This document shows positions 11,371-61,432 of a stretch of 64,000 nucleotides of DNA, one piece after another. The notes beneath the pieces were generated by a model. It did not search any database, had not been told where the DNA came from, and was given only the letters and a program-made list of their open reading frames with translations. The stretch lies in sequence record LR756511.1; one strand, written 5' to 3'. A program made the position numbers and the translations under genes. The first letter of the stretch is position 1, and each line of letters starts with the position of its first letter.

Positions 11371-11377
11371 TGGGGCA

Positions 11378-12310: not shown

Positions 12311-12316
12311 GGGATT

Positions 12317-12753: not shown

Positions 12754-12813
12754 GGGGAAGCGGGGACAGCAAACCCGCCTAATCTCTCTTATAAAGCTGT
12801 ACTTGAGGCTAAC

Positions 12814-13083
12814 ATGGACGCAAAAGACCTTGCCTTTAGTTTCTGTGGCTTGACGACAGATCAGAAGCGGCGGGAGTTCATCCAGCGTGAGCTAGGGAAC
12901 AATCCGTTGCATCATGCTCTGTTTGCCCGCGAATTAACCTTCCTGGGACATCCGCACGATTGGATTTGCTACAGAGATGCCATGAAACAGCTATATGGGC
13001 GATGCCCCGTATGCGATAGTTTCGGCACCTCTCCCGTTACGGAGCATACCTACGATGAGGGTTGTCTGTGTAAGCGACCCTAG
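12814..13083 (+). CDS. Hypothetical protein, C-terminal CPVC...CLC
   Basis: Between motifs 12795 and 13088. Confidence 0.7.
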   Translation: MDAKDLAFSFCGLTTDQKRREFIQRELGNNPLHHALFARELTFLGHPHDWICYRDAMKQLYGRCPVCDSFGTSPVTEHTYDEGCLCKRP

Positions 13084-13141
13084 TAAGAGCTGTACAAACT
13101 GAGTCAGTGGCACCTAACACCTTTTAGGAAAGGAACGACTG

Positions 13142-13396
13142 ATGACGAATCTGGAAGTGATGAAAGCCGTGGCAGAGGGCAAGATGACGGCAGAAGAGGG
13201 CGAGCGCTTGCTCAAGGAAAAGAAGCTGAAGCTCAAGGTGAGCAACAAGGGCGCCGTGCAACTCGACGGGCTGCGCCGCTTCCCTGTCACGCTCTACAAG
13301 AAAGAGTGGCAGGCGGTGCTGGAAATGAAGGACAGCATCCTCAAGTTCATTCAGGAAAACGACAAGCGGCTGACGGAAAAGGGTAGCGACGACTAA
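13142..13396 (+). CDS. Conserved small protein, SHOCT-like N-terminus plus KVS-x-KG...RFPVTLY domain
   Basis: EGKMTAEEGERLL and RFPVTLY-x-x-EW patterns. Confidence 0.7.
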   Translation: MTNLEVMKAVAEGKMTAEEGERLLKEKKLKLKVSNKGAVQLDGLRRFPVTLYKKEWQAVLEMKDSILKFIQENDKRLTEKGSDD

Positions 13397-13486
13397 CCTT
13401 GTGGGGCGGGGACAGCAAACCCGCCCCTATTCTTTCTTATAAAGCTGTACTAAAGAGGGTATAACCTTAACCCAAAGGAGTCAGCA

Positions 13487-13681
13487 ATGCCGCGAATGAC
13501 GAAAGAAGAGAAGCGAATCGAGAAGGAAACGGAACAGGCTTTCAACAAGAACGCCAGCGGTATTCAGTTCGACATCATGGATTTGGGCAAGATTCATCAG
13601 GCAGGAGTGAACGCGGGCAAGGCCAACCAGAGCATCGAAGAAGCGGTCAAGGCCGCAATCCAGACCTACCGCAAGAACTAA
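13487..13681 (+). CDS. Conserved phage hypothetical protein
   Basis: Motif 13443 plus AAGGAG. Confidence 0.7.
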   Translation: MPRMTKEEKRIEKETEQAFNKNASGIQFDIMDLGKIHQAGVNAGKANQSIEEAVKAAIQTYRKN

Positions 13682-13743
13682 GGGGCACGGCGGGGACAGC
13701 CAACCCGCCTATTCTCTTTTAAAGCTGTACTAAATGAGGCATT

Positions 13744-13935
13744 ATGCAACTCATTCGCTTCCAAGTTGGCGACCGTGACATGCTGATTCAAGCGGCAGAT
13801 GAGTGGTCCGCCCGCGAAAAGCTGAAGCAATACCTCAAGCGGCATCCGATGCTGCTGGTGCGATATGAGGATTGTCGATGCAAGGAAGTATGCGGGCATG
13901 TTGCAGATGGCATCTATACGCTGGGGAACAAATGA
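13744..13935 (+). CDS. Hypothetical protein
   Basis: Motif 13723, GAGG. Confidence 0.6.
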   Translation: MQLIRFQVGDRDMLIQAADEWSAREKLKQYLKRHPMLLVRYEDCRCKEVCGHVADGIYTLGNK

Positions 13936-14165
13936 ACGAACCGCAAGTAGGCGACCGTGTATTGTATCATGGTCGTTTTGACAACGTGGTGGAAGGGATA
14001 CTAGCGGAACGTATCCTGTCCCCACTGACGGGCAATCCCCGTTACCGCGTGGTCGATTCATGGGCAGAAGCCAAGGACGAAGAAGCTGGAAGATGGATCG
14101 ACGTGATGGAAATAATTGGCATCTATCCCAGCTGTACTAAAAGGAATATCTCTAACAAGGAGTGA
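13932..14165 (+). CDS. SH3-like hypothetical protein
   Basis: QVGDRVLY start; ATGA coupling. Confidence 0.55.
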   Translation: MNEPQVGDRVLYHGRFDNVVEGILAERILSPLTGNPRYRVVDSWAEAKDEEAGRWIDVMEIIGIYPSCTKRNISNKE

Positions 14166-14168
14166 CCT

Positions 14169-14348
14169 ATGTGCCAGTTTTGCGGTCAGCCGTGCGGTCA
14201 GCGGGAGTTCTGTGACGAAGCCTGCTACAAGGAGTATCAGGAAGAGAAGGCGATTCAGGAAGCCAGCATGAGAGAGGACGGAATCTCTCAGTTCTACGTC
14301 GATCCCTTCGATGAACCCTACCATTCCGACGTGCAAGGCGGGCTATAA
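14169..14348 (+). CDS. Cys-rich 59-aa protein (TRASH-like CxxC...FC-x-x-x-C)
   Basis: Hand-translated MCQFCGQPCGQREFCDEACY; motif 14130 plus AAGGAG. Confidence 0.6.
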   Translation: MCQFCGQPCGQREFCDEACYKEYQEEKAIQEASMREDGISQFYVDPFDEPYHSDVQGGL

Positions 14349-14416
14349 AAGCCCGTCCGTTTTCTTGTTTGTAAAGCTGTACTTAATACATTACCTCTAA
14401 CGCAAAGGAGAATGGA

Positions 14417-14716
14417 ATGGCACAGCGGCATATCATCAAGACGATCAACCCCAACGGCATCCCATCGCGGCTCGAAATCGACTTGTGGGAAATGAAGCAC
14501 GATTGCAACATCCAGCATGTGCAACGGCTTTACGTGGCATTCAAGCAAGGCAAGCGGCGCAAGATCAAGCGGCTCCGAGTCAATGAATACAAGAGCTACC
14601 CGTGCGAGTTGTGCGGCTCGCATACCTATCTTGATGCGGTTGTGGGCCGAAGTGTATTAAAGCTGTACGAAATACAGCAAAGGGAGGACAAACATGGGAC
14701 CATGCTTGTGCGGTGA
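14417..14716 (+). CDS. Hypothetical protein with CxxC
   Basis: Motif 14375 cassette leader. Confidence 0.7.
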   Translation: MAQRHIIKTINPNGIPSRLEIDLWEMKHDCNIQHVQRLYVAFKQGKRRKIKRLRVNEYKSYPCELCGSHTYLDAVVGRSVLKLYEIQQREDKHGTMLVR

Positions 14717-14903
14717 TCTTCGTTGTGGGTCATGTGGACCAGCACAAGGCAACAGCAAGTGCATCATTTGCGGCAAATGGGCCGATGAGGGGGGCTGCAC
14801 TGATCCCAAGAAGTGCGAAGAGGAACTAATCAAGTTTGAGGAAGCGTGGGCGAAGCAAGAGGAAGAATGGTCCAGAATGGAGGCAAACCTCGACCTGTAT
14901 TAA
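14694..14903 (+). CDS. Cys-rich hypothetical protein
   Basis: CLCG-x-x-x-C-x-x-C, CIICG; GGAGG RBS. Confidence 0.65.
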   Translation: MGPCLCGDLRCGSCGPAQGNSKCIICGKWADEGGCTDPKKCEEELIKFEEAWAKQEEEWSRMEANLDLY

Positions 14904-14939
14904 GCTGTACAAATGAGGGAGCAGGCTCAAACCTGCGTT

Positions 14940-15090
14940 GACAGGATGGACGGGGAATACTGGTTGCGGATTCGCACTCCGCTAGGGGCGTACGACCCTA
15001 TGAACTCCAACCCGCTTGAGATGGGAGGGAGAAGGCTAACCAGACTTAAAAAGCGGAGCTAAAAGGCCGCTGAACCCGTCCTACCCTGTC
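14940..15090 (+). ncRNA. Candidate structured RNA (or 49-aa ORF 14913-15062)
   Basis: GACAGG-AT-GGACGGG / CCCGTCC-TAC-CCTGTC closing stem; bracketed by motifs 14903 and 15096. Confidence 0.4.
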
Positions 15091-15131
15091 GTTAAAGCTG
15101 TACGAAATCCATTACCTCTAACACAAGGAGA

Positions 15132-15317
15132 TTGGTGATGGACAGTCTGGAAGCGTGGTTGGATTTTCGTCGTGGTGAGCGTTACGAACCGTCCCATCCT
15201 TGCTGCTTCCATTGCGGCGGGGAATGTAGCGGGGACACAACCGAAACCGTCACCATATACGACGACGTAACAGCGGAAAAGCCCATCTGCGATAACCCCG
15301 AAGAGTGTCCCAAGTAA
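15132..15317 (+). CDS. Cys-rich hypothetical protein
   Basis: CFHCG...ICD-x-x-x-C. Confidence 0.65.
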   Translation: MVMDSLEAWLDFRRGERYEPSHPCCFHCGGECSGDTTETVTIYDDVTAEKPICDNPEECPK

Positions 15318-15397
15318 AGGCAGGCAGGGGAATGCAAACCCTGCCTATTCTTGTTTATAAAGCTGTACTTAAAGCTTTACCTAACAAGGAGAATACT

Positions 15398-15661
15398 ATG
15401 AAGGTCGATTTCAAGCTTGCGGATTATCTCTCTCCTCGCGGCAAGTATCCTTACTCGCAACTGGCGACCGACTTGGAAACGGCGCTTGCCAGCGGCAATA
15501 CCGTCTATCTCTGGTCGGTTCCTGGTTTCTTCATGCTCAGTGGTCATCCCGATCCCAACAATTACGGCAAGAAGTGGCGCCCGTGGTCGGACGGCGAACT
15601 TGACTATCGAACCGCGAAGGATGCGCTTAACGGGAAGAACGGGAAAGCTCCATTGCGTTAA
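15398..15661 (+). CDS. Hypothetical protein
   Basis: Cassette leader shared with the next gene. Confidence 0.7.
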   Translation: MKVDFKLADYLSPRGKYPYSQLATDLETALASGNTVYLWSVPGFFMLSGHPDPNNYGKKWRPWSDGELDYRTAKDALNGKNGKAPLR

Positions 15662-15698
15662 AGCTGTACTAAAAGCTTTACCTAACAAGGAGAATACC

Positions 15699-15938
15699 AT
15701 GACGAAGGCAGAACTGGCAAAGGCCGTGGAACTGGCTCAGAACAAGCAAGAGATCAAGGACGATGATAGCGTTCTTGATGGGTTGTATCTGGCCAACTTC
15801 AAGCCCGTCGCCACTACGCTCGGCGCCGTCGCCCGTTTCATTCGCTGGCATTGTATCTACTTGAATGGAACGCTTGCAACGGATGAACTGGCCGAATTCG
15901 CGGGATTCGCCCGCCACCGCATCACGATAATCGGTTAG
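15699..15938 (+). CDS. Hypothetical protein
   Basis: Cassette leader AAAGCTTTACCTAACAAGGAGAATAC. Confidence 0.7.
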   Translation: MTKAELAKAVELAQNKQEIKDDDSVLDGLYLANFKPVATTLGAVARFIRWHCIYLNGTLATDELAEFAGFARHRITIIG

Positions 15939-16025
15939 AGGGAAAAGCGGGGGAAAGCCAACCCCGCTATTATTGCTTATAAAGCTGTACAAATAGCTTT
16001 ACCTCTAACGCAAAGGAGTCCGAAA

Positions 16026-16199
16026 ATGCGAATCCTCGACGCATGGGAAAAGGACCACAAGCCCGTCAAGCCCGAACAGGTCAAGGCCGATCTTCCGCGA
16101 CTTCAAGCGGAGCATGACAAGGCGTGCAAGCAAGACCCAACGTGGCAATTCTTCGGCGGCATCCTCACCGTCGAACAGCGACAGTATCAAGTAGTCTAA
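16026..16199 (+). CDS. Hypothetical 57-aa protein
   Basis: Hand-translated MRILDAWEKDHKPV...; motif 15983. Confidence 0.6.
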   Translation: MRILDAWEKDHKPVKPEQVKADLPRLQAEHDKACKQDPTWQFFGGILTVEQRQYQVV

Positions 16200-16257
16200 G
16201 CGGGGGGAAAGCTAAAGCTGTACTAAAAGCTTTACCTCTAACGCAAAGGAGTCAGAC

Positions 16258-16473
16258 ATGGGATCGCCAGTCGTCACCTGGATGGATGTGGCTTATAACG
16301 GCGGCATCGCAGAGGACGTTTTCGGCGTCCCCGATGAATGGTATGAGCAGGAACCCATCGAACCCGAACCCGAACCATGCCATTGTCGCGCTTGCGAGTA
16401 TGTCGCTTCCCTCCCATCCGACATGCAACTGCTCGCCGCAATGGTCCACGTCTGCGAGTCGGACGGCAACTAA
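16258..16473 (+). CDS. Hypothetical protein with CHC-x-x-C
   Basis: Motif 16216 cassette. Confidence 0.65.
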   Translation: MGSPVVTWMDVAYNGGIAEDVFGVPDEWYEQEPIEPEPEPCHCRACEYVASLPSDMQLLAAMVHVCESDGN

Positions 16474-16551
16474 AGGGAAGCGGGGGAAAGCCAACCCCGC
16501 TATTCTTGTTTATAAAGCTGTACTTATAGCTTTATAACAAAGGAGGAAGAA

Positions 16552-16680
16552 ATGGACGAAACCGATTTCGACTTGGTGCAAGAGGCGTGCGAGTGCGGGG
16601 AATTGCTCTACACCGATTGCAACGGCGGCAAACGGTGCGAACTCTGCGATCCACCCTGTCCGTCATGTTCCGATCAGTAA
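16552..16680 (+). CDS. Cys-rich 42-aa microprotein
   Basis: MDETDFDLVQEACECGELLYTDCNGGKRCELCDPPCPSCSDQ; AGGAGG RBS. Confidence 0.6.
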   Translation: MDETDFDLVQEACECGELLYTDCNGGKRCELCDPPCPSCSDQ

Positions 16681-16779
16681 AGGGAAAAGGCAGGGATTTA
16701 ATCCCTGCCAGTTTAATATCAATTCTCAAGCTGTACTTAAAGGGTTATCAACAACTCAACCCCTTCTAAGGAGAATGCG

Positions 16780-17019
16780 ATGCAGGCCAACAAGCTCAAC
16801 GTGGTGGTGGCTTACAAGGTCGAACGCAAGGCGTTCGCCAAGCCCCAAACCTTGACCGAAATCAAGGTCCGCTTGGGTGAGGAAGTGGTGGCAAGCCGCA
16901 CCATTCCTGGCCGCTGGAGCCAGAAGCAGGCGCTGGGGGAGTTCAAGCGCTTCCCCACCCGCTTCACGCAAATCGCCCCGCTCGACTTGGCGGGAGTCGC
17001 CACCTGTGCGGCAGCGTGA
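16780..17019 (+). CDS. Hypothetical protein
   Basis: Motif 16729, AAGGAG. Confidence 0.7.
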   Translation: MQANKLNVVVAYKVERKAFAKPQTLTEIKVRLGEEVVASRTIPGRWSQKQALGEFKRFPTRFTQIAPLDLAGVATCAAA

Positions 17020-17104
17020 GCCGCAGGGGGAGGACCGCCACTCCCCGCATCTTCCTTTATAAAGCTGTACTTAATACATTACCTCTAACACAAAGGAGTC
17101 GGAG

Positions 17105-17347
17105 ATGCGGGACACTTTCGCCACGATCATGAGCCAGCGATTGCCCGTCCGTTCCATCGAAGAACTGTCCAAGTGGCAACTCTTCTCCGCGTTGGGCGGC
17201 AAGGGCGTCAATGCCTGCCTCAAAATCGGAGGCGTCACCGTCTTGCTCGTCAGCATCGAACGCGAAAGCGGTTGCGGGTCAAGCTACAACCTCACCGTCC
17301 ACTACAACGGCGAGAACCACAAGGTCTATTGCCGCACGAAGGACTAA
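17105..17347 (+). CDS. Hypothetical protein
   Basis: Motif 17063 cassette. Confidence 0.7.
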   Translation: MRDTFATIMSQRLPVRSIEELSKWQLFSALGGKGVNACLKIGGVTVLLVSIERESGCGSSYNLTVHYNGENHKVYCRTKD

Positions 17348-17428
17348 CGGCAAGCGGGGACCGCCAACCCGCATACAGCTTTATAAAGCTGTACTTAATA
17401 CATTACCTCTAACGCAAAGGAGTCGAAG

Positions 17429-17584
17429 ATGGAACCGATCTACCGTGGCATCCCGTTCCCTCGCATCCTCCAATTCATCTTCACCCCCAACCCGCCCGAC
17501 CCGAAGAAGCGCCGCAAGGCACGGCTCACCCGCAAGCGCCGCCGCAAGCTGGTCAACCGTCAATCGCGGAGCATGGCCGCTTAA
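17429..17584 (+). CDS. Basic 51-aa protein
   Basis: Hand-translated; KKRRKARLTRKRRRK. Confidence 0.6.
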   Translation: MEPIYRGIPFPRILQFIFTPNPPDPKKRRKARLTRKRRRKLVNRQSRSMAA

Positions 17585-17641
17585 TGCGGCCTCTTCTCAT
17601 TCTTCTAAAGCTGTACTAAATAAAGCTAAAGGAGAACGAAC

Positions 17642-17818
17642 ATGCATAACGTGCAGATGAAGAAGAAGGACGAGTATCATTGCGGCACCATCAAGACGCC
17701 CATCAACCGCAACATCATCCCGATCCAGTATCAGATCATGGCCGTTGCGGTCTGCAAGCGGCATGATAAGAGCAAGAGCCGCGCCAAGCAGAAACGTGCT
17801 TGGCAGAAGGGGGACTAA
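17642..17818 (+). CDS. Basic 58-aa protein
   Basis: Hand-translated MHNVQMKKKDEY...; AAGGAG. Confidence 0.6.
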   Translation: MHNVQMKKKDEYHCGTIKTPINRNIIPIQYQIMAVAVCKRHDKSKSRAKQKRAWQKGD

Positions 17819-17948
17819 AATGGTAGATGGGGACAAGCGCCGCCGTCGTTTCTCCACCGAAGCCCGCCGTAAGTGGTATGCTTACTGGCGAACCCTACGT
17901 TTTGCAAAGCTGTACAAATTGGGGATACCCTAACCCAAGGAGACAGAC

Positions 17949-18103
17949 ATGCACAGCCGCGAGTCGATCCAGGCGTTGCTCATGAACAACCCCAAGGCCG
18001 TCTCAGCAAGGCGCAACTGGAACGCGCCCGCGACATGCTCATGAAGTATGCGGCGCAACTCGCCCGTGTTGCCAACGGGGAGGACGTGGCCACCCCCGTC
18101 TAG
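17949..18103 (+). pseudogene. Internally deleted, frameshifted gene remnant
   Basis: MHSRESIQALLMNNPKAV in one frame joins LSKAQLERARDMLMKYAAQLARVAN in another. Confidence 0.55.
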
Positions 18104-18160
18104 GGGGCTTGCCCGTTTTATAAAGCTGTACTTAATGCAGTATCTAACCAAGGAGATGCC

Positions 18161-18349
18161 ATGAGTGACGCGGAAAGCGCCCTGATCGACGCGGAGTATG
18201 CCATGAAGCAAGTGCAATTCGGCCTTGCTCATAAGGGCGAAGCTCCCAAGAATGCCGTCGATTATGTCGCATGGTATGCCATGAGTGATTGCCTCCAACG
18301 TGCGAGCGACGGCTTGGAACGGCTCATCGACAAGCTGAAGAGTATGTAA
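18161..18349 (+). CDS. Hypothetical protein
   Basis: Between motifs 18124 and 18350. Confidence 0.7.
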   Translation: MSDAESALIDAEYAMKQVQFGLAHKGEAPKNAVDYVAWYAMSDCLQRASDGLERLIDKLKSM

Positions 18350-18392
18350 AGCTGTACGAAAAGCTTTACCTCTAACCCAAAAGGAGCAACGC

Positions 18393-18626
18393 ATGAGAGA
18401 GCAAATCCGCAAGGCAATGGAGCGCGGCATCATCACCGAAGTCGAAGCGGCAACCGCAAACAAGGTGGCCGACTGGCGGGAAAGCTGGATCAACGGCAAC
18501 CGCAAAGACGTGGTTGTTGAACTGATCGAGAACGGCTTGCTCTCCGACGCCATCGCCTTCGCTGGCACCCTGGATCATGACGACAGGGAAACCCTGCTGA
18601 AAATGCTCCGCAACCGCGACAAGTAG
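18393..18626 (+). CDS. Hypothetical protein
   Basis: Cassette leader. Confidence 0.7.
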   Translation: MREQIRKAMERGIITEVEAATANKVADWRESWINGNRKDVVVELIENGLLSDAIAFAGTLDHDDRETLLKMLRNRDK

Positions 18627-18707
18627 AGGGAAGCGGGGACCGCCAACCCGCATACAGCTTTATAAAGCTGTACTTAATACATTACCTCTAACGCAAAGGA
18701 GCAAGTC

Positions 18708-18908
18708 ATGGGTAAGCTGGCCTACTGGTCGTTCGAAGTGTTCGCCGTTGTCGCGCCCGTCGTCTTTGGGGCGATGTTCACCTGGGTTTGGTGGCTGCTG
18801 TTCACCTACGGCAGCGATCATACCCTTGGCGTCAAGCTGGGCACGTTGTTCGGCATGAGCGTCACCGCATGGGTGCTGTATCTCATGTGGACGGCAACCC
18901 GATCCTAA
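18708..18908 (+). CDS. Small two-TM membrane protein
   Basis: Two hydrophobic segments; cassette leader. Confidence 0.7.
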   Translation: MGKLAYWSFEVFAVVAPVVFGAMFTWVWWLLFTYGSDHTLGVKLGTLFGMSVTAWVLYLMWTATRS

Positions 18909-19048
18909 AGCTGTACGAAATACGTTACCTCTAACGAAAGGAGAGCTAGCCCTACAGGAACTACGCAACAAGAGATGGGTCAGCGCCTTCTGCGTCAGCG
19001 CCATGCTGGTGCTGGTATGGTGGGTCAAGCTACCATTCTAATGAGCAT

Positions 19049-19071
19049 GGGCTAGGCTAACAACCTAGCCC
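19049..19071. terminator. Hairpin at the convergence of the two gene blocks
   Basis: GGGCTAGG-CTAACAA-CCTAGCCC. Confidence 0.5.
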
Positions 19072-19456
19072 AATTGTATTTAAATACATTACATCAGTAC
19101 AGCTATATGAGCATAGCACTTAGTACCATATGCAGTACCTGCTATAATGGTATATGTTTATAAATTGTTATAGCCAGCTGTACGCAAAGTTATTAATAGA
19201 GAAATTAAAGTCAAAAAGCGTTTCAATTTGGTTCCATAGGGACGGGGATGGAGGCGCACTGCCTTTACTTTCCGTCTATGGAGTGATAAAGTAGGTGTAT
19301 GCCGTGAAGGGCGAACACGGCTTACGGGAACAGCGGTGGTTCGTCCCATCCTGTTCCTATCACATTTCGTATTCTGCAATACTGCTATTCTGCGATTCTG
19401 TAGTTTGGGTCAAGAAAGCGAGTCCCTGGATGGACTCGCTTTCTTGTTTTGTACAG

Positions 19457-50882: not shown

Positions 50883-52235
50883 TTATAACCCATTACCTTG
50901 TGCCGCTCCCGCCTGTGGTCGCTGCGGAGGCTGACCTTGTGGAGCATAATTATTAAATAGAACCTTTTTACCCTGCCATGTCATAACCGCTGTTATACAA
51001 GAGCCAGTTGGATGTTCCGCTTGAGTAGAAATTAACCTCGTAGCAGTCCAATCAGATGTAAAAACGGTTGCATTTAAATTAACATTTGTATATTCGATAG
51101 CTGTAACTTTAAACAACTCGTTGTCTATCTTGCAATAAAATGGTGGAGCAGGCCACTGTAAGCCTAATTTGCCTCCACATTTATCGACAATTGGTTGGTC
51201 CACAATTGTATTATAAACTGTAAACGTAATTTCGTCGTCAACATTACCGTTTGGAATATCAGAGCTAGTATATGTTGTCAAGCACTGAATAATTGTATAA
51301 GGGTCAGGAGTAGTCGTCAAATCCCCCGAATTTGCAAACAAAAACCAAGATATACAGTTATTGCTAGTTCTTAAATAGGTTTGATTGCCATTGCTCGGTA
51401 ATAGCTTTATACCTTTTACGTCTTTCCAAGAAATAGTTGTTCCGTATTTAGGCCAAGCATTATTAGGTGGACGCCAAGGAATATTATTGATGGTTACATT
51501 TGTGCCGCCTAAAGAGGGGTGAACGTCGCCTGTAACCCATGTGCAATGACCATTAGAGTTATAGAAGCCTACAGGTGTACCAGCATTATAAAAAGTGGTA
51601 AAATTAAACCCAAATTGGTTTGCACCACCCCAAATGCCAGGATTATTGTCAATCAACACGGCTCCCGAATACAAATTTACCTGCCTTACTTTCGCCTTCG
51701 CGGGAGCATTATTGTTTGCATACTCATAAGCAACAAACAATGCCGCTCCTTGACTGCTTTGGCATCCAGGCAAACGGCACCCATCAAATCCAATTGGTTG
51801 ACCAAGATCAACAGGAATACCATTGATTGCGTAAGTTCCATTACCATTAACAATGTTGTCCCCCGCTGGGCCTACATCAAATGCATATACTCTATTTCTT
51901 AAATAGGTTGTGTTTTCTGGTCCTAAGTTCTGCCAGCAAGTTGAATTACATAATCCAAATGGTGTATCAGTAAGAGGAGTCGAAGGCGTGTTTTTACCAA
52001 ACCCAATAATAGGATCAGGCTGATTATTAGATTGATAAGTGTTTACCAATAACCATGCATTTGATACAGTTGCTCCACGCGGAATACTTCTAAGATAGAA
52101 GGTTCCTGTTCCTGTGTTCCTAGTGCCAGCTACAACAACCACATAATCGCCGTAAGTAGGCTCTTGCTCTAATAAAATACCCAAATTCTGCACATAAACC
52201 GCAGATGGATTGGGTGCTGTTGGACATAGTGCCAT
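50883..52235 (-). CDS. Putative virion structural / tail-associated protein
   Basis: N/G/T-rich 450 aa; C-terminal F-x-x-KIDNE...V-x-A...TR module like the N-termini of neighbours. Confidence 0.6.
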   Translation of the reverse strand: MALCPTAPNPSAVYVQNLGILLEQEPTYGDYVVVVAGTRNTGTGTFYLRSIPRGATVSNAWLLVNTYQSNNQPDPIIGFGKNTPSTPLTDTPFGLCNSTCWQNLGPENTTYLRNRVYAFDVGPAGDNIVNGNGTYAINGIPVDLGQPIGFDGCRLPGCQSSQGAALFVAYEYANNNAPAKAKVRQVNLYSGAVLIDNNPGIWGGANQFGFNFTTFYNAGTPVGFYNSNGHCTWVTGDVHPSLGGTNVTINNIPWRPPNNAWPKYGTTISWKDVKGIKLLPSNGNQTYLRTSNNCISWFLFANSGDLTTTPDPYTIIQCLTTYTSSDIPNGNVDDEITFTVYNTIVDQPIVDKCGGKLGLQWPAPPFYCKIDNELFKVTAIEYTNVNLNATVFTSDWTATRLISTQAEHPTGSCITAVMTWQGKKVLFNNYAPQGQPPQRPQAGAAQGNGL

Positions 52236-52267: not shown

Positions 52268-53275
52268 CTACGACAAATTAAGCACAACCATAGCGGCACT
52301 ACCATTAGCATCATTGCTTGACAAACAATAACCAAATTGATCTGGCGCCGTTGTAAAATAGTCTGTTATTGTAGTCGTTAGCACTGTCGTAAAGTTTACA
52401 TTATTATTAGAATACTTGAATGTTAAATTGCTGTCGTCATTACCAATCTGGAACCAAATGAGCGGACCCTTCAACACTGATGCTGAAATGCCTACATATG
52501 TGCCAGCAGGCGTCGTAGGATTGGCATATTTGTCCACCGAAACTACCATATCCGTATTAGTAAGACTCGTAGCGGTGTCAAATAACAGCCTCAGAAAAAC
52601 AACCTTGCCAGTAGCACTCTCTCTCAAAACTAATCCAACACACGTTTGATTAGCAGGGTAAAGAGTTGCTAAGAATCCAGCCGTAAATGTATATGGAGTA
52701 GCAGGCGTGGTCTTCAAATACATCATCAAATTAGCTGGATTAACACCAACGCCAGGACTTCCAAATGCTAAACCGCCATCGGTAGTCACCACGGTAGCCG
52801 ATCCCTGATTGACCCAGCTAAAACCAGTCGTAGTAGGCTCAGTAAGAGTAAATAGTGGTCCCCATGTCTGCCAGCCGCCAAAATCAGTGCTAGCATCTCT
52901 ATTCAAATAAAAGCTGGTATCATTAAACCAAAGCCTTCCAGGGAAATCAGTAGTAGCAGCAGGGCGAGCGGAAAAGTTCCCCTCTTGACAATAACACCAC
53001 GTTGTATTATTCAAACCTTCTAAGGTAAAAACGTTAGCAATGTCAAGACCCGCCGCATGAAATACAGCCGTAGTGCTTTCTTCCGCTCTCGTTACCGTGA
53101 AAGTATTTCCCGTAACGCCCGTTACCAACATAATCTCATCTTCGACCCTCACTCGAAAAGGAGTTTGAGTCGGGAAACTAGTAACATCTAAAACCAAAAT
53201 AGTTGTATCAGATATTTGACAATCATTAACTATTGTGGACTTACTATTATTACCGAAATATTCGCAGAATGCCAT
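52268..53275 (-). CDS. Putative tail fibre / receptor-binding protein, paralog 2
   Basis: DTTI-x-V...FP...F-x-V-x-V-x-DEIMLVT...TVTRAEE-x-T N-module plus lectin-like C-domain. Confidence 0.7.
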   Translation of the reverse strand: MAFCEYFGNNSKSTIVNDCQISDTTILVLDVTSFPTQTPFRVRVEDEIMLVTGVTGNTFTVTRAEESTTAVFHAAGLDIANVFTLEGLNNTTWCYCQEGNFSARPAATTDFPGRLWFNDTSFYLNRDASTDFGGWQTWGPLFTLTEPTTTGFSWVNQGSATVVTTDGGLAFGSPGVGVNPANLMMYLKTTPATPYTFTAGFLATLYPANQTCVGLVLRESATGKVVFLRLLFDTATSLTNTDMVVSVDKYANPTTPAGTYVGISASVLKGPLIWFQIGNDDSNLTFKYSNNNVNFTTVLTTTITDYFTTAPDQFGYCLSSNDANGSAAMVVLNLS

Positions 53276-53277: not shown

Positions 53278-54342
53278 TTATGCCTTATACCAAGAATATA
53301 TGTTCATGCCAGAACCGCCCGTTGTATTATTTGTACCAAATGCAAACCCAATTGTATCTGGCCCACTTGTCAAGAAGTCTGTCCTTGACCGCGAATCAAA
53401 TAATACGAACGAATAGCCATCATTAGAAAAATACCACTTTAAATTAGTACCATCATCCTCAATAACGAAAAAGATCACCGATCCCATCAATGTAGCCGCA
53501 CTCAGCTTCGTATAATTAGAATTGAAGGTGTTTGGATCATCATACTTGTCTAATGATATGACAAGATTGCCGTTAGAAACAACGTTAGTGGTATCATATT
53601 CAATTTTAAAATAGATAAACTTATCTGTCGCACTATCTCTAAACACTACGCCGCAAGAAGTCTGATCTGCGGGATATAAAGTAGGCGTAAATGCTATTAC
53701 AACAGAATAAGGTGGGGAGGTAGGTGCCTCTTCGTTTACAGGCGTGACAAATAACTTTAAATTAGTGCCAGCGCCAACATTAGCCCCTACGCCCAAACAA
53801 AGCGAACCATTTTCAGAATTACCGCCAGCGATAGGATTTACAGTATCGTCCTCATTTACCCATTGCCAAATAGGATCAAATGTCGTTTGATTTATTGCGT
53901 CGAAATTTCGATAATCATTAAAGGTGAATGTCGGTCCCCAAGCATTCCATGAGACTCCATCTTCACGATAGACAAACCAGCCTGGACCTTGGGTTAAATA
54001 AATACGACCATTCATGCCAGGAGCGGGTAGATTTGCTCTGGTATCGCTAGAAAAGCGGCAGGAACTCCAGGCGTTAAAACTGCCTTGAGTAAAGACATTA
54101 GCAACAAGTGAGCCTGTCGTATGGGCAACAGCCGTGGTATCTTCTTCGGCTCGCGTGACAGTCCACGTTGTTGTCATTTCTCCCGCCGTTACGAGCATGA
54201 TTTCATCATCAATCATGATACGAAACGGAGAAGCAGGGAATCCTGTATTAGAAGCGACTTGAATTGTAGTGTCGCTAATAGTAACATTAGCCGCCAACGT
54301 CGTTGTCGGATAATTCGCAAAATTTTCGCATACAATAGCCAT
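53278..54342 (-). CDS. Putative tail fibre / receptor-binding protein, paralog 1
   Basis: Same two-domain architecture as 52268-53275. Confidence 0.7.
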   Translation of the reverse strand: MAIVCENFANYPTTTLAANVTISDTTIQVASNTGFPASPFRIMIDDEIMLVTAGEMTTTWTVTRAEEDTTAVAHTTGSLVANVFTQGSFNAWSSCRFSSDTRANLPAPGMNGRIYLTQGPGWFVYREDGVSWNAWGPTFTFNDYRNFDAINQTTFDPIWQWVNEDDTVNPIAGGNSENGSLCLGVGANVGAGTNLKLFVTPVNEEAPTSPPYSVVIAFTPTLYPADQTSCGVVFRDSATDKFIYFKIEYDTTNVVSNGNLVISLDKYDDPNTFNSNYTKLSAATLMGSVIFFVIEDDGTNLKWYFSNDGYSFVLFDSRSRTDFLTSGPDTIGFAFGTNNTTGGSGMNIYSWYKA

Positions 54343-54363: not shown

Positions 54364-54588
54364 CTAATTTCCTATGCATGGTTGACCATATTCACTCAAA
54401 ACTTCACGCAATACATCCTCACTAACCATTGGCATCGCCTCGCCCTTTACAATCCAGTAATTTGAGCTAGGCTTACGAATACATTCCATTTGCAGAAAAC
54501 GATGCCCGCCAAACTTTCCGAATAGCCGCGTTAGCAAATCCGAAAGCCTAACCGTCTCCACTCCATCAACACTCCACCAATAATTCAT
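54364..54588 (-). CDS. Hypothetical protein
   Basis: Tiled ORF. Confidence 0.5.
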   Translation of the reverse strand: MNYWWSVDGVETVRLSDLLTRLFGKFGGHRFLQMECIRKPSSNYWIVKGEAMPMVSEDVLREVLSEYGQPCIGN

Positions 54589-54611
54589 GATGCTACTCCC
54601 CTAAATAAGAC

Positions 54612-55070
54612 ATGATTAACTTCTTCTTCGTCCTCTTCGGATGGTATATTGCCGACCTTGTTACTGGAATATATCACTATTTTGTAGATAACTACGGCTC
54701 AGCCAAGACCCCAATCTTCGGCAAGCAAATCAAAGAATTTCAAGAACACCACATTCGTCCAAGAGCCTTCCTATACCACTCGCAATGGGACAGTCTCAAA
54801 TTACCACTTATAGCATCAATTCCATTCCTGTTTCTGGCGGTCTTTAATCCTTATTTCTTCTTGCCGCTAGCGATTGGTATTGCCTTCTCTCAATGGATTC
54901 ATAAATGGTCCCATATGGACAGTCCACCCGCAATAATAAAAGCATTGCAGAAATGTTGGATAGTGCTACCGAAGGAAGAACACCAGCGGCACCATACAAC
55001 TTTCGACAATGCTTACTGTATCGTAAACGGATGGTCAAATCCGCTATTGGATAGACTTATTAACCGTTAG
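54612..55070 (+). CDS. CarF/TMEM189/FAD4-family lipid desaturase
   Basis: ADLVTGIYHYFVDNYGS...FQEHH-x-x-P...WIHKWSH...HQRHH...YCIVNGW-x-NP. Confidence 0.85.
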   Translation: MINFFFVLFGWYIADLVTGIYHYFVDNYGSAKTPIFGKQIKEFQEHHIRPRAFLYHSQWDSLKLPLIASIPFLFLAVFNPYFFLPLAIGIAFSQWIHKWSHMDSPPAIIKALQKCWIVLPKEEHQRHHTTFDNAYCIVNGWSNPLLDRLINR

Positions 55071-55341
55071 CAGGAATACTTAAAGTAATTAGTTTGCTAC
55101 CAAAGGTAGGATTCCAGCTAACATGCCAGCCAGCCTTACGGTAATCAAGAACCGCATCAATAATAACAAACGGCTTCAATCCATCCAAATTCACTACGAT
55201 GGACGGAGGAGGCTGTTCAACCGCAAATGCTTTGGAGATTGCATGATTGATTTTGGTTCTCGCCAAATCAAGTTCAGCATTATGATCGAGAAGGTTATCA
55301 CCAACGGCAACATAAAGAGCATGATTAGGAGAAATAGTCAT
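55060..55341 (-). CDS. Hypothetical protein
   Basis: Tiled ORF. Confidence 0.6.
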   Translation of the reverse strand: MTISPNHALYVAVGDNLLDHNAELDLARTKINHAISKAFAVEQPPPSIVVNLDGLKPFVIIDAVLDYRKAGWHVSWNPTFGSKLITLSIPANG

Positions 55342-55352: not shown

Positions 55353-55694
55353 TTAAACACTATACTTGAGACTAGGAGGCGAAACTTTCATACGCTCATT
55401 AAAAATATTAGGATGAAGTTTAGACATTTCAATCCTAACCCTGTATAACATATCCGCATAGGCATCAACGACTTCCGTAAACAATTCTTTATCATTTACG
55501 AATGCTTCGGTAACGTCAATGACAACATTGCCAGCCATTGTGCCCGCATCAGCATCGCTTAAACCATGCTTCTTGAAAGCTTCAAAGAGAGCCTTTGTGG
55601 TAAGATAATCTGGAGTTTTAGGGATATCCAAAGCCCTCATTGCCTTAACCATATCCATGAAATCATTACGTAGGCTCATTTTGACTCCAAACAA
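55353..55694 (-). CDS. Hypothetical protein
   Basis: Tiled ORF. Confidence 0.65.
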   Translation of the reverse strand: MFGVKMSLRNDFMDMVKAMRALDIPKTPDYLTTKALFEAFKKHGLSDADAGTMAGNVVIDVTEAFVNDKELFTEVVDAYADMLYRVRIEMSKLHPNIFNERMKVSPPSLKYSV

Positions 55695-55896
55695 TGAATT
55701 GTTGAGTATCTGGACGCCAGAAAGACGTTATGTAAGCTTTCGCTTCGTCTAACCCCTTAAACGTATTCAGATACCTTGTTGGGTTGTTAGGATTACATTT
55801 CGCCACTTCAACCGCATTCACTACAGCCAAATATTCATTTGAAATAACTGTAATAGTGCCGATTACCAGTGGCCCAATTGTTGCTGTATAACTCAT
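55666..55896 (-). CDS. Hypothetical protein
   Basis: After motif 55904. Confidence 0.55.
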   Translation of the reverse strand: MSYTATIGPLVIGTITVISNEYLAVVNAVEVAKCNPNNPTRYLNTFKGLDEAKAYITSFWRPDTQQFIVWSQNEPT

Positions 55897-55990
55897 GTCT
55901 TATGTACAGCTGTAGCCTTCAAAAAGGACGCGCGTGAGGTAGGCTCCCACATACACCTTACTTGGGCTTTTAGCAGGAGTTAGTCCCCCT

Positions 55991-56739: not shown

Positions 56740-56998
56740 TGGTTTCTCCCTTCGTTTGTTGCCTTATCTCCCAAGCGGCAATGAGCAATTTATCCCGTTC
56801 ATCGCAGAATTGTTCCGCTTCCTTAATCGAATTAAATGGAATCTGGTGAAAATCCCACCCTTCCATTACAAGGTAATATCCATTGCCATTGACGTTAGGC
56901 GGGAAGTAATAGATTTCATAGCCTCGATATTTCTTAACCAATTCGTAGCCCATTATTGCACCTTCCTCGCCCATCTTGTGTACAGCTTCGACTTCCAA
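56729..56998 (-). CDS. Hypothetical protein
   Basis: Tiled ORF. Confidence 0.55.
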   Translation of the reverse strand: MEVEAVHKMGEEGAIMGYELVKKYRGYEIYYFPPNVNGNGYYLVMEGWDFHQIPFNSIKEAEQFCDERDKLLIAAWEIRQQTKGETSEL

Positions 56999-58119
56999 GA
57001 ATCGTCCTCATCTTCAAACTCATTACAGACAATCCAAATGCTTAGTCCAACATTTACCGCAACGGTTAGGAAAAATGTCAGCATCACCGTCCACATCGGC
57101 GGCTCAACGGTCAAATAGTCAAAATCCTTAAAATGCTTACGCACGAATCCAGCCTGAACCTTCTCCCCCACCACATCTACCGACTTACCAAGATCAAACT
57201 TATCTTGTTCAATAATAAACTGCTTAACTTCCGCCTTGAGCATTTCTTGCTCAGTCCAACTAATAACATGGCACCACTTAACCTTTTCCCCATCCAGCCC
57301 AACCGCAACAATAAATTCGTTCTTATTGCCGCCTTGCCAGTGGTTTTCCTGATTAAGAGCAACGTCGAATGGAAGATCGTGATACAGAGCAAAAATCAAG
57401 CGGCATTGTTTATTATGTCCATTGCGAGCGTTCCAAAGAGTAAGCTTACGCTCCGCAACAGGGTCCGCGCCGCCAAGAATGAATTGAGAGTCATAGAATC
57501 CACGCACCAGCGGATATTCATACAACCCTTCCTTAGAATCAGGCTCAGGGAATTTGAATACACTATTGCTGGCGATAACCCTGTTCTTATAGCGATGCTG
57601 AGTAGTGCAAATCTCGCACTTATCATCGCTACCGTCCCAATTCGAAGCATACTTGTTGCCATTAATCGAATGATAATGGCGATGCATATTAATGAACTGT
57701 TTATTACCAAACTTCTGAACCAATTCAGAAAACTTACGCTCATTAACGCCAACCGTAATGCCATTGGTATCAACGACTTGCCAAACGGGAGGATGATAGT
57801 CTACGTCATACGCATGTTCGTAGCCGTCTTGGACTTCTGACGTAGTGCCATCCGAATTCTTAACGGTCTTATATTTGGGGTGACGGCATGGAACTTCTTC
57901 ATCCCATGCCTCATAGAATTCGGCGGTTTGAACGGCTCCAGTCCACCATTCTGTATCGGAAGTCTGAACAGCTTCGACAGTCCACTTGAGGATAAAGCAA
58001 AGAATCAGGGACACGCCAAAGGGAATGAGGAATTCCCACCACTTAGTTTTATGCTTGAAATAAGCATAGAGAAGGATTGCTGTAATGATAGGAATAATCA
58101 TTGAGCAGTAGATAAGCAT
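56953..58119 (-). CDS. Membrane-anchored protein (TPM-like central domain)
   Basis: N- and C-terminal TM segments; W-x-GGNKNE-x-IV. Confidence 0.75.
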   Translation of the reverse strand: MLIYCSMIIPIITAILLYAYFKHKTKWWEFLIPFGVSLILCFILKWTVEAVQTSDTEWWTGAVQTAEFYEAWDEEVPCRHPKYKTVKNSDGTTSEVQDGYEHAYDVDYHPPVWQVVDTNGITVGVNERKFSELVQKFGNKQFINMHRHYHSINGNKYASNWDGSDDKCEICTTQHRYKNRVIASNSVFKFPEPDSKEGLYEYPLVRGFYDSQFILGGADPVAERKLTLWNARNGHNKQCRLIFALYHDLPFDVALNQENHWQGGNKNEFIVAVGLDGEKVKWCHVISWTEQEMLKAEVKQFIIEQDKFDLGKSVDVVGEKVQAGFVRKHFKDFDYLTVEPPMWTVMLTFFLTVAVNVGLSIWIVCNEFEDEDDSWKSKLYTRWARKVQ

Positions 58120-61033: not shown

Positions 61034-61432
61034 TTACTGTGAACATAATCTCCCCCGAATATCGCCCTCAAGTTTCGCATTCTTAATAAGCTCCAGAATA
61101 TTTAGAGCTTCAGGATAAGAGATACGTTCCTTGAGAGTAACAGGCGAACCCTGCTCCTCTACGAAATCCTTAGCCTCTCTTAATCCCAAATTTAGAACTT
61201 CGCGGGTGAGCTTAATAACCCGAATCTTCTGTTCAGGACTCCAGTGAACGACTACGGCATGGTCAAAATGCTCAACAATCTGAATTTGCGTCGGCATTTT
61301 GGTATGCAAAACGCCCTTGTTATCCATAAGGGTAACATAAAGCTGTTCTCGATCTTGATGAACAAGAACAATTTCGCCACGGTCGCCGCAATCGTTAAAC
61401 ATCGCCAATCGACCAAGCAAATTAGTAAGCAT
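61034..61432 (-). CDS. Protein with C-terminal ribosomal bL12 (L7/L12)-CTD-like domain
   Basis: QKIRVIKLTREVLNLGLREAKDFVE. Confidence 0.7.
   Translation of the reverse strand: MLTNLLGRLAMFNDCGDRGEIVLVHQDREQLYVTLMDNKGVLHTKMPTQIQIVEHFDHAVVVHWSPEQKIRVIKLTREVLNLGLREAKDFVEEQGSPVTLKERISYPEALNILELIKNAKLEGDIRGRLCSQ

What the first reader, a model, noticed from the sequence alone, without database searches (positions are those of the whole stretch)
54601..55070. Phage-encoded CarF/TMEM189-type lipid desaturase behind a late-type promoter
Seen: compact 152-aa membrane protein with the family His boxes (HYFVD, EHH, HKWSH, HQRHH), antisense to neighbours, with CTAAATA at 54601. Established: Myxococcus CarF and animal TMEM189 are plasmanylethanolamine desaturases for plasmalogen synthesis; plant FAD4 is a relative. 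I do not recall a characterised phage member. Inference: remodelling of host ether or other lipids late in infection.
Basis: partly seen in the sequence, partly recalled or inferred. Interest (0 to 1): 0.7.

Follow-up and report, generated by a model that had tools for sequence, protein, structure and literature searches.

The report
Minimal FAD4-like lipid desaturase in megaphage
A 595-kb uncultured phage carries a real, well-conserved gene for a very small membrane lipid desaturase. It belongs to the CarF/PEDS1/FAD4 family but sits nearer the plant FAD4 branch than the plasmalogen enzymes, and the proposed "late promoter" in front of it is no more than chance.

Summary
The ORF is real: 54612..55070 (+), 152 aa, with all four His boxes, and it is the only + strand gene in a long - strand block. 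It matches Pfam PF10520 (Lipid_desat) at E=3.6e-40. The window is bases 1-64000 of LR756511.1, an "uncultured phage" of 595,163 bp. A neighbouring gene is most similar to genes of Tenacibaculum and Prevotella Lak phages, so the contig is viral.

The "CarF/TMEM189-type" label holds only at family level. The protein scores 90 bits against a 500-bit cut-off for the CarF equivalog model. In trees it falls in a supported clade of short proteins (152-173 aa) that groups with eukaryotic FAD4-like enzymes, not with PEDS1/CarF (84/72 support; AU p=0.036 against the alternative). These short forms lack the first of the family's four transmembrane helices and the C-terminal helix. They keep all eight family-wide His plus the essential Asp and Phe. 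The AlphaFold2 model has pLDDT 96.7.

Other clade members sit in jumbo-phage contigs. One sits in a bacterial lipid gene cluster.

CTAAATA is not a promoter signal here: 7 copies against 10 expected, and it is not conserved in relatives. The phage's real gene-start motif is AGCTGTAC (93 copies against 1 expected), and this gene lacks it.

Substrate and role remain inferred.

The parts
54612..55070 (+). CDS of the 152-aa PF10520 lipid desaturase homologue (end coordinate includes the stop codon)
   Evidence: ORF list; Pfam PF10520 E=3.6e-40; AlphaFold2 pLDDT 96.7, pTM 0.90
54615..54674 (+). Hydrophobic helix a (residues 2-21). It corresponds to TM2 of four-TM family members and leads into the first His box.
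   Evidence: Hydropathy; model helix 2-28; alignment A3 shows no counterpart of TM1
54675..54689 (+). His box 1, HYFVD (H22, D26)
   Evidence: H22 and D26 are invariant in 44 family sequences. They correspond to the essential His and Asp of PEDS1 (PMC9131029).
54738..54752 (+). FQEHH (F43, H46, H47)
   Evidence: H46 and H47 invariant, F43 nearly invariant. The equivalent Phe and the HH pair are essential in PEDS1.
54777..54779 (+). H56, at the position of the PEDS1-specific ninth His (CarF H113, mouse H131)
   Evidence: This column is His in the PEDS1 clade, Arg in the FAD4 clade and variable (H/Y/N/I/G...) in the short clade
54792..54899 (+). Hydrophobic hairpin (residues 61-96) with an NP turn at residues 79-80; counterpart of TM3-TM4, and several residues shorter than in long forms
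   Evidence: Hydropathy; model helices 58-75, 80-91 and 93-99; gap in A3
54900..54914 (+). His box 3, HKWSH (H97, H101)
   Evidence: Invariant
54981..54995 (+). His box 4, HQRHH (H124, H127, H128)
   Evidence: H127 and H128 invariant, H124 nearly invariant
54589..54611 (.). 23-bp divergent intergenic spacer. The + strand ctcccc at 54596-54601 is the reverse complement of GGGGAG, a Shine-Dalgarno-like site 7 nt before the ATG of the - strand gene 54364..54588. No comparable site precedes the desaturase ATG.
   Evidence: Read directly from the sequence; upstream strings
54601..54607 (+).
   Evidence: 7 copies against 10.1 expected; not conserved upstream of orthologues
54364..54588 (-). Divergent 74-aa neighbour; no family hit; not hydrophobic
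55060..55341 (-). Convergent 93-aa neighbour that overlaps the desaturase 3' end by 11 nt. The same convergent-overlap layout is seen in L028 and L003.

Best explanation
The gene encodes a functional, minimal membrane-bound di-iron lipid desaturase of the PF10520 (CarF/PEDS1/FAD4) family, carried as an auxiliary gene by a roughly 595-kb megaphage whose host is probably a Bacteroidota bacterium.

Shown here: family membership; retention of every residue known to be essential across the family; a confident fold; strong purifying selection; and membership of a distinct short-form clade found in other jumbo phages.

Inferred: the protein inserts into the host inner membrane with its N-terminus outside, using three hydrophobic helices and placing both His-rich loops in the cytoplasm. 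There the eight His bind two irons. Using O2 and host reducing equivalents, it introduces a double bond close to the glycerol end of a chain on an intact host glycerophospholipid. The two characterised relatives both act there: FAD4 at C3 of the sn-2 acyl chain of phosphatidylglycerol, and PEDS1 at C1' of the sn-1 alkyl chain. Because the protein groups with FAD4-like enzymes and not with PEDS1, an ester-linked acyl chain of host PG or PE is a more likely substrate than a plasmanyl ether lipid.

The benefit to the phage is unknown. Candidates are altered membrane properties during a long infection cycle, exclusion of other phages, or lysis timing. The gene has its own orientation and lacks the phage's common gene-start motif, so it is probably regulated separately. 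When it is expressed cannot be told.
For: Family and fold:
- Pfam PF10520 at E=3.6e-40.
- Invariant H22, D26, H46, H47, H97, H101, H127, H128, and near-invariant F43 and H124, across 44 family members that include Dictyostelium PEDS1 and FAD4. These are the residues that mutagenesis showed to be essential (PMC9131029).
- AlphaFold2 pLDDT 96.7, pTM 0.90.
- Best solved-structure match is the di-metal lipid hydroxylase Scs7p (TM 0.54). Best viral matches are giant-virus 'Lipid desaturase domain' proteins (TM 0.75).

Topology:
- Hydropathy shows segments 1-21 and 61-93, and all Lys/Arg lie in the loops that carry the His boxes.

Selection:
- pN 0.23-0.41 against saturated pS 0.78-0.92 among five clade members.

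Phylogeny:
- The short clade has 96/95 support, and short+FAD4 together 84/72.
- Holding the short clade with the PEDS1-like and other long forms costs 9.9 lnL, AU p=0.036.

Phage context:
- The record is LR756511.1 'uncultured phage'.
- Two tail-fibre-like neighbours and a phrog_2087 neighbour. The latter's best hits are Tenacibaculum and Prevotella Lak phages.
- Relatives L003 and L028 share other genes with the window.
- P0008 lies between split phage RNA polymerase genes.
- P0024 lies in a contig with an HNH endonuclease and a virion-like protein.

Lipid role:
- P0040 lies between a FadL-type transporter gene and a cyclopropane-fatty-acid-synthase-type gene.
- The Flavobacteriales short form lies in an operon with two His-box desaturases.

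Precedent:
- Cyanophage Delta-9 desaturases were shown to be active (PMC5776448).
Against: - No activity data exist for any short-form member.
- The first transmembrane helix and the C-terminal helix present in every characterised member are missing, so activity is not guaranteed.
- No redox partner (ferredoxin, flavodoxin, cytochrome b5, thioredoxin or peroxiredoxin) was found among 81 ORFs of the window. Only 64 of 595 kb were examined.
- The sister relationship with FAD4 has only moderate support (84/72; AU p=0.036).
- The window protein does carry a His at the PEDS1-specific position (H56).
- Codon adaptation is at the low edge of the phage's genes (0.689 against 0.773 +/- 0.030).
- The host is inferred from one neighbouring gene only.
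Confidence: 0.6

Rival explanations
1. The protein is a PEDS1/CarF-type plasmanylethanolamine desaturase that converts host ether lipids into plasmalogens late in infection.
For: The protein belongs to the same Pfam family. It has all nine His positions required in CarF/TMEM189, including H56 at the PEDS1-specific position, plus the essential Asp and Phe.
Against: - The CarF equivalog model gives 90.5 bits against a 500-bit cut-off.
- The protein lies outside the PEDS1/Myxococcota clade in both trees. Holding it with the PEDS1-like and other long forms has AU p=0.036.
- H56 is replaced by Y, N, I, G and other residues in close relatives, so it is not under the constraint seen in PEDS1.
- Family members outside the PEDS1 clade (Arabidopsis, Bradyrhizobium) failed to complement a carF deletion (PMC9131029).
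- The aerobic plasmanyl pathway is concentrated in Myxococcota (bioRxiv 10.1101/2025.10.10.681575), whereas this phage lineage points to Bacteroidota hosts.
- Nothing supports 'late' expression.
Confidence: 0.12
2. The protein has the same fold but different chemistry. It would be a hydroxylase, or another di-iron oxidase acting on a lipid such as a sphingolipid, ornithine lipid or isoprenoid of a Bacteroidota host, rather than a desaturase.
For: There is a weak Pfam FA_hydroxylase hit (E=2.9e-4). The best solved-structure match is the sphingolipid alpha-hydroxylase Scs7p. Desaturase and hydroxylase outcomes are known to switch with few changes in this superfamily (from my own knowledge).
Against: The FA_hydroxylase hit is below the Pfam cut-off (21.7 against 31 bits). 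The Scs7p match is weak (E=0.63, TM 0.54). Both characterised PF10520 activities are desaturations.
Confidence: 0.15
3. The gene is a passenger or decaying gene with no role in infection. It would be a recent capture from a bacterium, truncated at the N-terminus and not expressed.
For: It has the opposite orientation to all neighbours. It lacks both the phage's AGCTGTAC gene-start motif and a clear Shine-Dalgarno site. Its codon adaptation is low. It lacks TM1.
Against: - The short architecture is shared by about 25 sequence clusters and by a second, independent phage clade. It is therefore a stable form, not a truncation.
- All catalytic residues are kept, and pN is far below pS.
- Orthologues at 56-66% identity persist in related phages in the same inverted, convergent-overlap layout.
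- GC content is typical of the phage.
Confidence: 0.08

Closest known systems
FAD4 (palmitoyl-[glycerolipid] 3-(E)-desaturase) of plastids, and FAD4-like proteins of algae
   Same: Same Pfam family and same eight-His, Asp and Phe constellation. FAD4-like enzymes are the nearest named group in the trees. They share the VDNYGSxxTPxxGxQIxxFQxHH motif. Identity to Porphyridium FAD4 is 38-43%.
   Different: The phage protein is 152 aa against roughly 260-340 aa. It has no transit peptide, no first transmembrane helix, no C-terminal FFRxLE helix, and a shorter TM3-TM4 hairpin. It has His, not Arg, at the position that distinguishes FAD4 from PEDS1. It is sister to the FAD4 clade rather than inside it. 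No PRXQ-like partner was seen in the window. It is bacterial or phage, not plastid.
PEDS1 / TMEM189 / Myxococcus CarF (plasmanylethanolamine desaturase)
   Same: Same family and essential residues. H56 occupies the PEDS1-specific His position. The His boxes are predicted to be cytoplasmic, as in CarF.
   Different: It fails the CarF equivalog model, lies outside the PEDS1 clade, has three rather than four hydrophobic helices, and the ninth His is not conserved in its own clade.
Cyanophage Delta-9 lipid desaturases (vFADs; Roitman et al. 2018, PMC5776448)
   Same: Both are phage-encoded auxiliary membrane lipid desaturases thought to remodel host membranes.
   Different: By my own knowledge the vFADs belong to a different family, the acyl-lipid Delta-9 desaturases. 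They are larger, occur in cyanomyoviruses, and their activity has been shown experimentally.
Short PF10520 proteins of other phages (Erythrobacter phage vB_EliS-L02 UIS25202.1 and 24 IMG/VR contigs) and PF10520 proteins of giant viruses (Harvfovirus, Mollyvirus Mo1-1 as named in the record)
   Same: Virus-encoded PF10520 proteins. The phage ones also start at the helix just before the first His box.
   Different: The other phage proteins form a separate, well-supported clade (100/99), are 161-187 aa long and keep the C-terminal helix, with only 24-35% identity to the window protein. The giant-virus proteins are 215-220 aa and infect eukaryotes. All are uncharacterised.

Membership tests
Pfam PF10520 Lipid_desat (CarF/PEDS1/FAD4 family) | Score above the curated gathering threshold | tested here: met
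   138.3 bits against 26.4, E=3.6e-40, profile positions 2-154 of 175
Pfam PF10520 Lipid_desat (CarF/PEDS1/FAD4 family) | Eight His conserved in all homologues, in the pattern HxxxD / HH / HxxxH / HxxHH | tested here: met
   H22, H46, H47, H97, H101, H124, H127 and H128 align with the conserved His of 43 family members. The definition comes from PMC9131029.
Pfam PF10520 Lipid_desat (CarF/PEDS1/FAD4 family) | Conserved Asp and Phe shown to be essential in mouse PEDS1 (D100, F118) | tested here: met
   D26 is invariant and F43 nearly invariant in A3
Pfam PF10520 Lipid_desat (CarF/PEDS1/FAD4 family) | Four-transmembrane-helix topology with all His cytoplasmic | tested here: not met
   Only three hydrophobic helices. 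The protein starts at the counterpart of TM2, and an in-frame stop two codons upstream forbids an extension. Charge distribution agrees with cytoplasmic His loops.
Pfam PF10520 Lipid_desat (CarF/PEDS1/FAD4 family) | O2-dependent lipid desaturase activity | not testable with these tools
   Needs expression and lipid analysis
PEDS1 / CarF orthologue group | NCBIfam NF045946 equivalog cut-off | tested here: not met
   90.5 bits against a 500-bit cut-off
PEDS1 / CarF orthologue group | Ninth essential His (CarF H113, mouse H131) | tested here: inconclusive
   Present in the window protein (H56), but Y, N, I, G and other residues occupy it in close relatives
PEDS1 / CarF orthologue group | Phylogenetic placement with the Myxococcota, Amorphea and Discoba PEDS1 proteins | tested here: not met
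   Placed in a separate clade that groups with FAD4-like enzymes. Holding the short clade with the PEDS1-like and other long forms gives AU p=0.036.
PEDS1 / CarF orthologue group | Complements an M. xanthus carF deletion and makes vinyl ether lipid | not testable with these tools
   Experimental
FAD4 (plastid Delta-3-trans desaturase) | Placement inside the FAD4 clade | tested here: not met
   Sister to the FAD4 clade, not inside it. The FAD4 clade has 100/99 support without the short forms.
FAD4 (plastid Delta-3-trans desaturase) | Arg at the position of the PEDS1 ninth His | tested here: not met
   His in the window protein; Arg in the FAD4 rows
FAD4 (plastid Delta-3-trans desaturase) | 16:1 Delta-3-trans formation on sn-2 of phosphatidylglycerol; stimulated by PRXQ | not testable with these tools
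   No peroxiredoxin or thioredoxin family hit among 81 window ORFs. The rest of the genome was not examined.
T4-type late promoter | TATAAATA consensus placed about 10 nt upstream of the transcription start site, recurring upstream of late genes | tested here: not met
   The sequence is CCTAAATA, ending 4 nt before the ATG. CTAAATA occurs 7 times against 10.1 expected. TATAAATA occurs twice in the window. It is not conserved in L028 or L003.

The most novel reading that the evidence does not exclude
The 152-173-aa proteins would be a third functional type within the PEDS1/FAD4 family: the smallest membrane di-iron desaturases seen here, spread mainly by jumbo and mega-phages. In this reading the phages use them to put an unusual headgroup-proximal double bond into host phospholipids as part of host takeover. 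Possible purposes are conditioning the membrane for a long infection, for infection-associated compartments, or for exclusion of rival phages. As a by-product, the protein would be a tractable minimal model for a family that includes the human plasmalogen enzyme and has no matching sequence among solved structures.
Probability: 0.25. Interest if true: 0.7.

Novelty: new variant of a known kind. Interest (0 to 1): 0.5.

Why it matters
Lipid desaturases carried by phages have so far been shown to work only for the unrelated Delta-9 enzymes of cyanophages. Here the CarF/PEDS1/FAD4 family turns up in at least two independent phage clades, which suggests that remodelling host membrane lipids is a more general phage strategy, including in the largest known phages.

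The short form keeps every catalytic residue in about half the length of the characterised enzymes. It gives a very confident predicted fold, and no PDB sequence matches it. That could make it a useful minimal system for working out how this family, including human PEDS1, binds iron and chooses its position on the lipid chain.

The tentative sister relationship with plastid FAD4 also bears on where that enzyme came from.

Tried and rejected
- PHROGs: no family matches the desaturase.
- PDB sequence search: no hit.
- Foldseek against the PDB: only a weak Scs7p match.
- IMG/VR scan with the single protein: nothing. It succeeded only with an alignment.
The close alignment A7 found one distant Flavobacteriales MAG.
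- JGI metagenome scan with A7: nothing.
- Accession search in papers: LR756511 is not mentioned anywhere. The Al-Shayeb 2020 text has no mention of desaturase or lipid. The link of this record to that study rests on my own recollection only.
- Cluster look-up gave no names or accessions.
- Several context look-ups hit contigs of about 1 kb and were uninformative.
- Sigma-70-type promoter and terminator scans around the gene were at chance level.
- I considered whether a neighbouring small ORF supplies the missing TM1 in trans. I rejected this because the 74-aa and 93-aa neighbours are not hydrophobic.
- I considered a T4-like late promoter and rejected it.
- I considered that the short forms are truncated gene calls and rejected it. 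All start with Met 6-10 residues before the GW(Y/F)xADL motif, and in the window an in-frame stop lies two codons upstream.

Full report
**Observation**

The region holds an ATG-initiated ORF at 54612..55070 on the + strand, encoding 152 aa. An in-frame TAA two codons upstream of the ATG (54606-54608) rules out a longer N-terminus.

The gene is the only + strand gene in a block of - strand genes that runs from about 19 kb to the end of the window. It diverges from a 74-aa gene 23 bp upstream. It converges on a 93-aa gene and overlaps it by 11 nt. CTAAATA is at 54601-54607, as stated.

**Family**

The protein matches Pfam PF10520 (Lipid_desat) at E=3.6e-40, 138 bits against a cut-off of 26.4. 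There is a sub-threshold hit to FA_hydroxylase. It matches no PHROG family. The NCBIfam CarF equivalog model gives only 90.5 bits against a cut-off of 500. So it is a family member but not a CarF equivalog.

**Is the contig viral?**

The window is identical to bases 1-64000 of LR756511.1, an unannotated 595,163-bp "uncultured phage" record. I believe this record belongs to the huge-phage survey of Al-Shayeb et al. 2020, but I could not verify that.

- The genes at 52268-53275 and 53278-54342 are paralogues with tail-fibre-like PHROG hits.
- The gene at 56953-58119 is phrog_2087. Its best phage matches are Tenacibaculum phages pT24, PTm1 and PTm5 and the Prevotella Lak megaphages. This points to a megaphage lineage with Bacteroidota hosts.
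- The window also encodes a ribosomal L7/L12-like protein, a T4-type RNA ligase, a LAGLIDADG endonuclease and one tRNA-Leu.

The refuting condition "the contig is not viral" is not met.

**Promoter claim**

CTAAATA occurs 7 times in the window against 10.1 +/- 3.2 expected. It ends 4 nt before the ATG. It is absent upstream of the orthologues in L028 and L003. The sigma-70-type and terminator scans are at chance level.

The ctcccc just before CTAAATA is the reverse complement of GGGGAG, a ribosome-binding site for the divergent 74-aa gene.

While checking this I found the motif that really recurs before genes in this phage. AGCTGTAC occurs 93 times against 0.98 expected.

- It lies on the + strand from 0.7 to 19.2 kb (55 copies, consensus t..TaAAGCTGTACtaAa).
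- It lies on the - strand from 19 to 62 kb (36 copies).
- Start codons usually lie 16-45 nt downstream.

The desaturase lacks this motif. It lies inside a 10-kb stretch without the motif (45.8-55.9 kb) that also holds the tail-fibre-like genes. Its 5' flank, GCTACTCCCCTAAATAAGACATG, resembles the gene start GCTACAGCTGTACATAAGACATG of the gene at 55666-55896, but the motif core is missing. The timing of expression therefore cannot be inferred, and "late-type promoter" is unsupported.

**Architecture**

According to the CarF/TMEM189 review (PMC9131029):
- CarF has four transmembrane helices with all His residues in the cytoplasm.
- Eight His are conserved and essential in all homologues.
- A ninth His (CarF H113, mouse H131) is specific to PEDS1-type enzymes. 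It is Arg in plants.
- An Asp and a Phe are also essential.

In an alignment of 44 family members, the window protein has H22, D26, H46, H47, H97, H101, H127 and H128 at invariant columns, and F43 and H124 at nearly invariant columns. H56 sits at the ninth-His column. That column is His in the PEDS1 rows, Arg in the FAD4 rows and variable in the protein's own clade.

The protein starts at the helix that leads into the first His box. It therefore lacks TM1 and the N-terminal region. It also has a shorter TM3-TM4 hairpin and lacks the C-terminal amphipathic helix.

Hydropathy shows hydrophobic segments at 1-21 and 61-93. All Lys and Arg lie in the His-bearing loops. This fits a topology with the N-terminus outside and the His boxes inside.

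AlphaFold2 gives pLDDT 96.7 and pTM 0.90. No PDB sequence matches the protein. The best structural match is the di-metal lipid hydroxylase Scs7p (TM 0.54). In the viral structure library the best matches are giant-virus "Lipid desaturase domain" proteins (TM 0.75).

**Relatives and phylogeny**

An exhaustive phmmer search found 1,984 hits. The best hits are nearly all 150-175 aa long.

- In a 111-row quick tree the window protein lies in a clade of 21 short forms with 98% support.
- In a 77-row careful tree that clade has 96/95 support. It groups with a eukaryotic FAD4-like clade (itself 100/99) at 84/72.
- The PEDS1-type sequences (Dictyostelium, Myxococcales and others) lie elsewhere.
- Holding the short clade with the PEDS1-like and other long forms costs 9.9 log-likelihood units, AU p=0.036.

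The motif VDNYGSxxTPxFGxQIxxFQxHH is shared with FAD4-like proteins. The placement nearer FAD4 is the better-supported reading, but the support is only moderate.

**Where the short clade lives**

- The closest relatives (56-66% identity: P0001-3 and P0007) come from small metagenomic contigs. L003 and L028 share other genes with the window: the L7/L12-like gene and a gene at 48.8-49.1 kb. They show the same inverted, convergent-overlap layout.
- P0008 (46% identity) lies between split phage-type RNA polymerase beta and beta' genes in a 40.8-kb contig.
- P0024 lies in a contig with a phage HNH endonuclease and a virion-like protein.
- The clade is not purely viral. P0040 lies between a FadL-type transporter gene and a cyclopropane-fatty-acid-synthase-type methyltransferase gene.
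- The only hit among 185,579 reference genomes is a 189-aa short form in a Flavobacteriales MAG, in an operon with two His-box desaturases.
- A profile search found about 25 short-clade clusters, all metagenomic and none named.

Among five clade members, nonsynonymous differences are 0.23-0.41 per site while synonymous sites are saturated at 0.78-0.92. This indicates purifying selection. The gene's GC content (42.0%) is typical of the phage. Its codon adaptation (0.689) is at the low edge of the phage's genes (0.773 +/- 0.030).

**A second phage clade**

Erythrobacter phage vB_EliS-L02 encodes a homologue annotated as a hypothetical protein, located between phoH and the portal gene. Another 24 IMG/VR contigs carry 161-187-aa homologues. 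Together these form a separate clade with 100/99 support. Two of the contigs have clear phage replication or nucleotide-metabolism neighbours. The record named Mollyvirus Mo1-1 and Harvfovirus also carry the family. Viral carriage of PF10520 is therefore recurrent but uncharacterised. I found no paper on it.

**Mechanism**

Shown here: family membership, retention of the catalytic residues, a confident fold, purifying selection and phage carriage.

Inferred: a three-helix, N-terminus-out membrane protein binds two irons through eight cytoplasmic His. Using O2 and host reductant, it desaturates an intact host glycerophospholipid near the glycerol end of a chain.

Both characterised family activities act at that end. 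PEDS1 acts at C1' of the sn-1 alkyl chain. FAD4 acts at C3 of the sn-2 acyl chain of phosphatidylglycerol. The placement nearer FAD4, the bacterial lipid-gene contexts and the restriction of the aerobic plasmanyl pathway mainly to Myxococcota make an ester-linked acyl chain a likelier substrate than an ether lipid.

FAD4 activity is stimulated by peroxiredoxin Q. No such partner, nor any ferredoxin, thioredoxin or cytochrome b5, was found among 81 window ORFs. Only 64 of 595 kb were examined.

The benefit to the phage is speculative. The only tested precedent is the cyanophage Delta-9 desaturases (PMC5776448).

**Verdict**

It is not supported for the PEDS1/plasmalogen assignment or for late expression.

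This is a new, minimal, largely phage-borne variant of a known enzyme family. It is moderately interesting (0.5) as an unreported class of phage lipid-remodelling gene and as a small model for a family that has no matching sequence in the PDB.

Noticed in passing
window 368-62311 (for example 12404-12411 +, 55904-55911 -): AGCTGTAC occurs 93 times against 0.98 expected. It is on the + strand from 0.7 to 19.2 kb (consensus t..TaAAGCTGTACtaAa, usually followed by CTCTAAC..AAGGAG..ATG) and on the - strand from 19 to 62 kb, with start codons mostly 16-45 nt downstream. It follows gene orientation and switches strand at about 19.1 kb. It is probably the phage's own promoter or gene-start signal. 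There is a motif-free gap at 45.8-55.9 kb. The motif also occurs twice in the 3.5-kb relative L003.
   Followed up: partly
window 61034-61432 (-): A 132-aa protein carries a ribosomal L7/L12 C-terminal domain (Pfam E=2.5e-11). A homologue lies 1.8 kb from the desaturase in relative L003.
   Followed up: partly
window 52268-53275 (-) and 53278-54342 (-): Two adjacent paralogous genes have tail-fibre-like N-termini and a shared phrog_19068 C-terminal part. The 450-aa gene at 50883-52235 next to them has no family hit.
   Followed up: partly
window 56953-58119 (-): A phrog_2087 protein of unknown function with a hydrophobic N-terminus and C-terminus. Its best phage matches are Tenacibaculum phages and Prevotella Lak megaphages, which suggests a Bacteroidota host lineage.
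   Followed up: partly
L002 2337-2873 (Erythrobacter phage vB_EliS-L02) and L004-L027 (IMG/VR): A second, phylogenetically separate clade of short (161-187 aa) PF10520 proteins in phages. It includes a cultured Erythrobacter siphophage, where the gene lies between phoH and the portal gene and is annotated as hypothetical.
   Followed up: partly
contig of P0040 (no DNA held) and L036 839-3550: Cellular contexts of short forms. One lies between a FadL-type outer-membrane transporter gene and a cyclopropane-fatty-acid-synthase-type methyltransferase gene. One lies in a Flavobacteriales MAG operon after two His-box fatty acid desaturases.
   Followed up: no
P0009 (682 aa): A 682-aa protein with two matched stretches to the desaturase domain. 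It may be a tandem or fused form of the family. Its context was not examined.
   Followed up: no
window 1-19200: This block consists of many very short + strand genes at 250-400-bp spacing. Each is preceded by the AGCTGTAC motif and a strong AAGGAG site. A simple longest-ORF caller assigns several of them to the wrong strand. tRNA-Leu(TAA) is at 6309-6392. Strong Shine-Dalgarno use is unexpected if the host is Bacteroidota.
   Followed up: no
window 54589-54614 compared with 55897-55919 (-): The desaturase 5' flank GCTACTCCCCTAAATAAGACATG matches the gene start GCTACAGCTGTACATAAGACATG of the 76-aa gene at 55666-55896 in 15 of 20 positions plus the ATG, but lacks the motif core. This could be a decayed or variant copy of the gene-start cassette, or it could be chance.
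   Followed up: no
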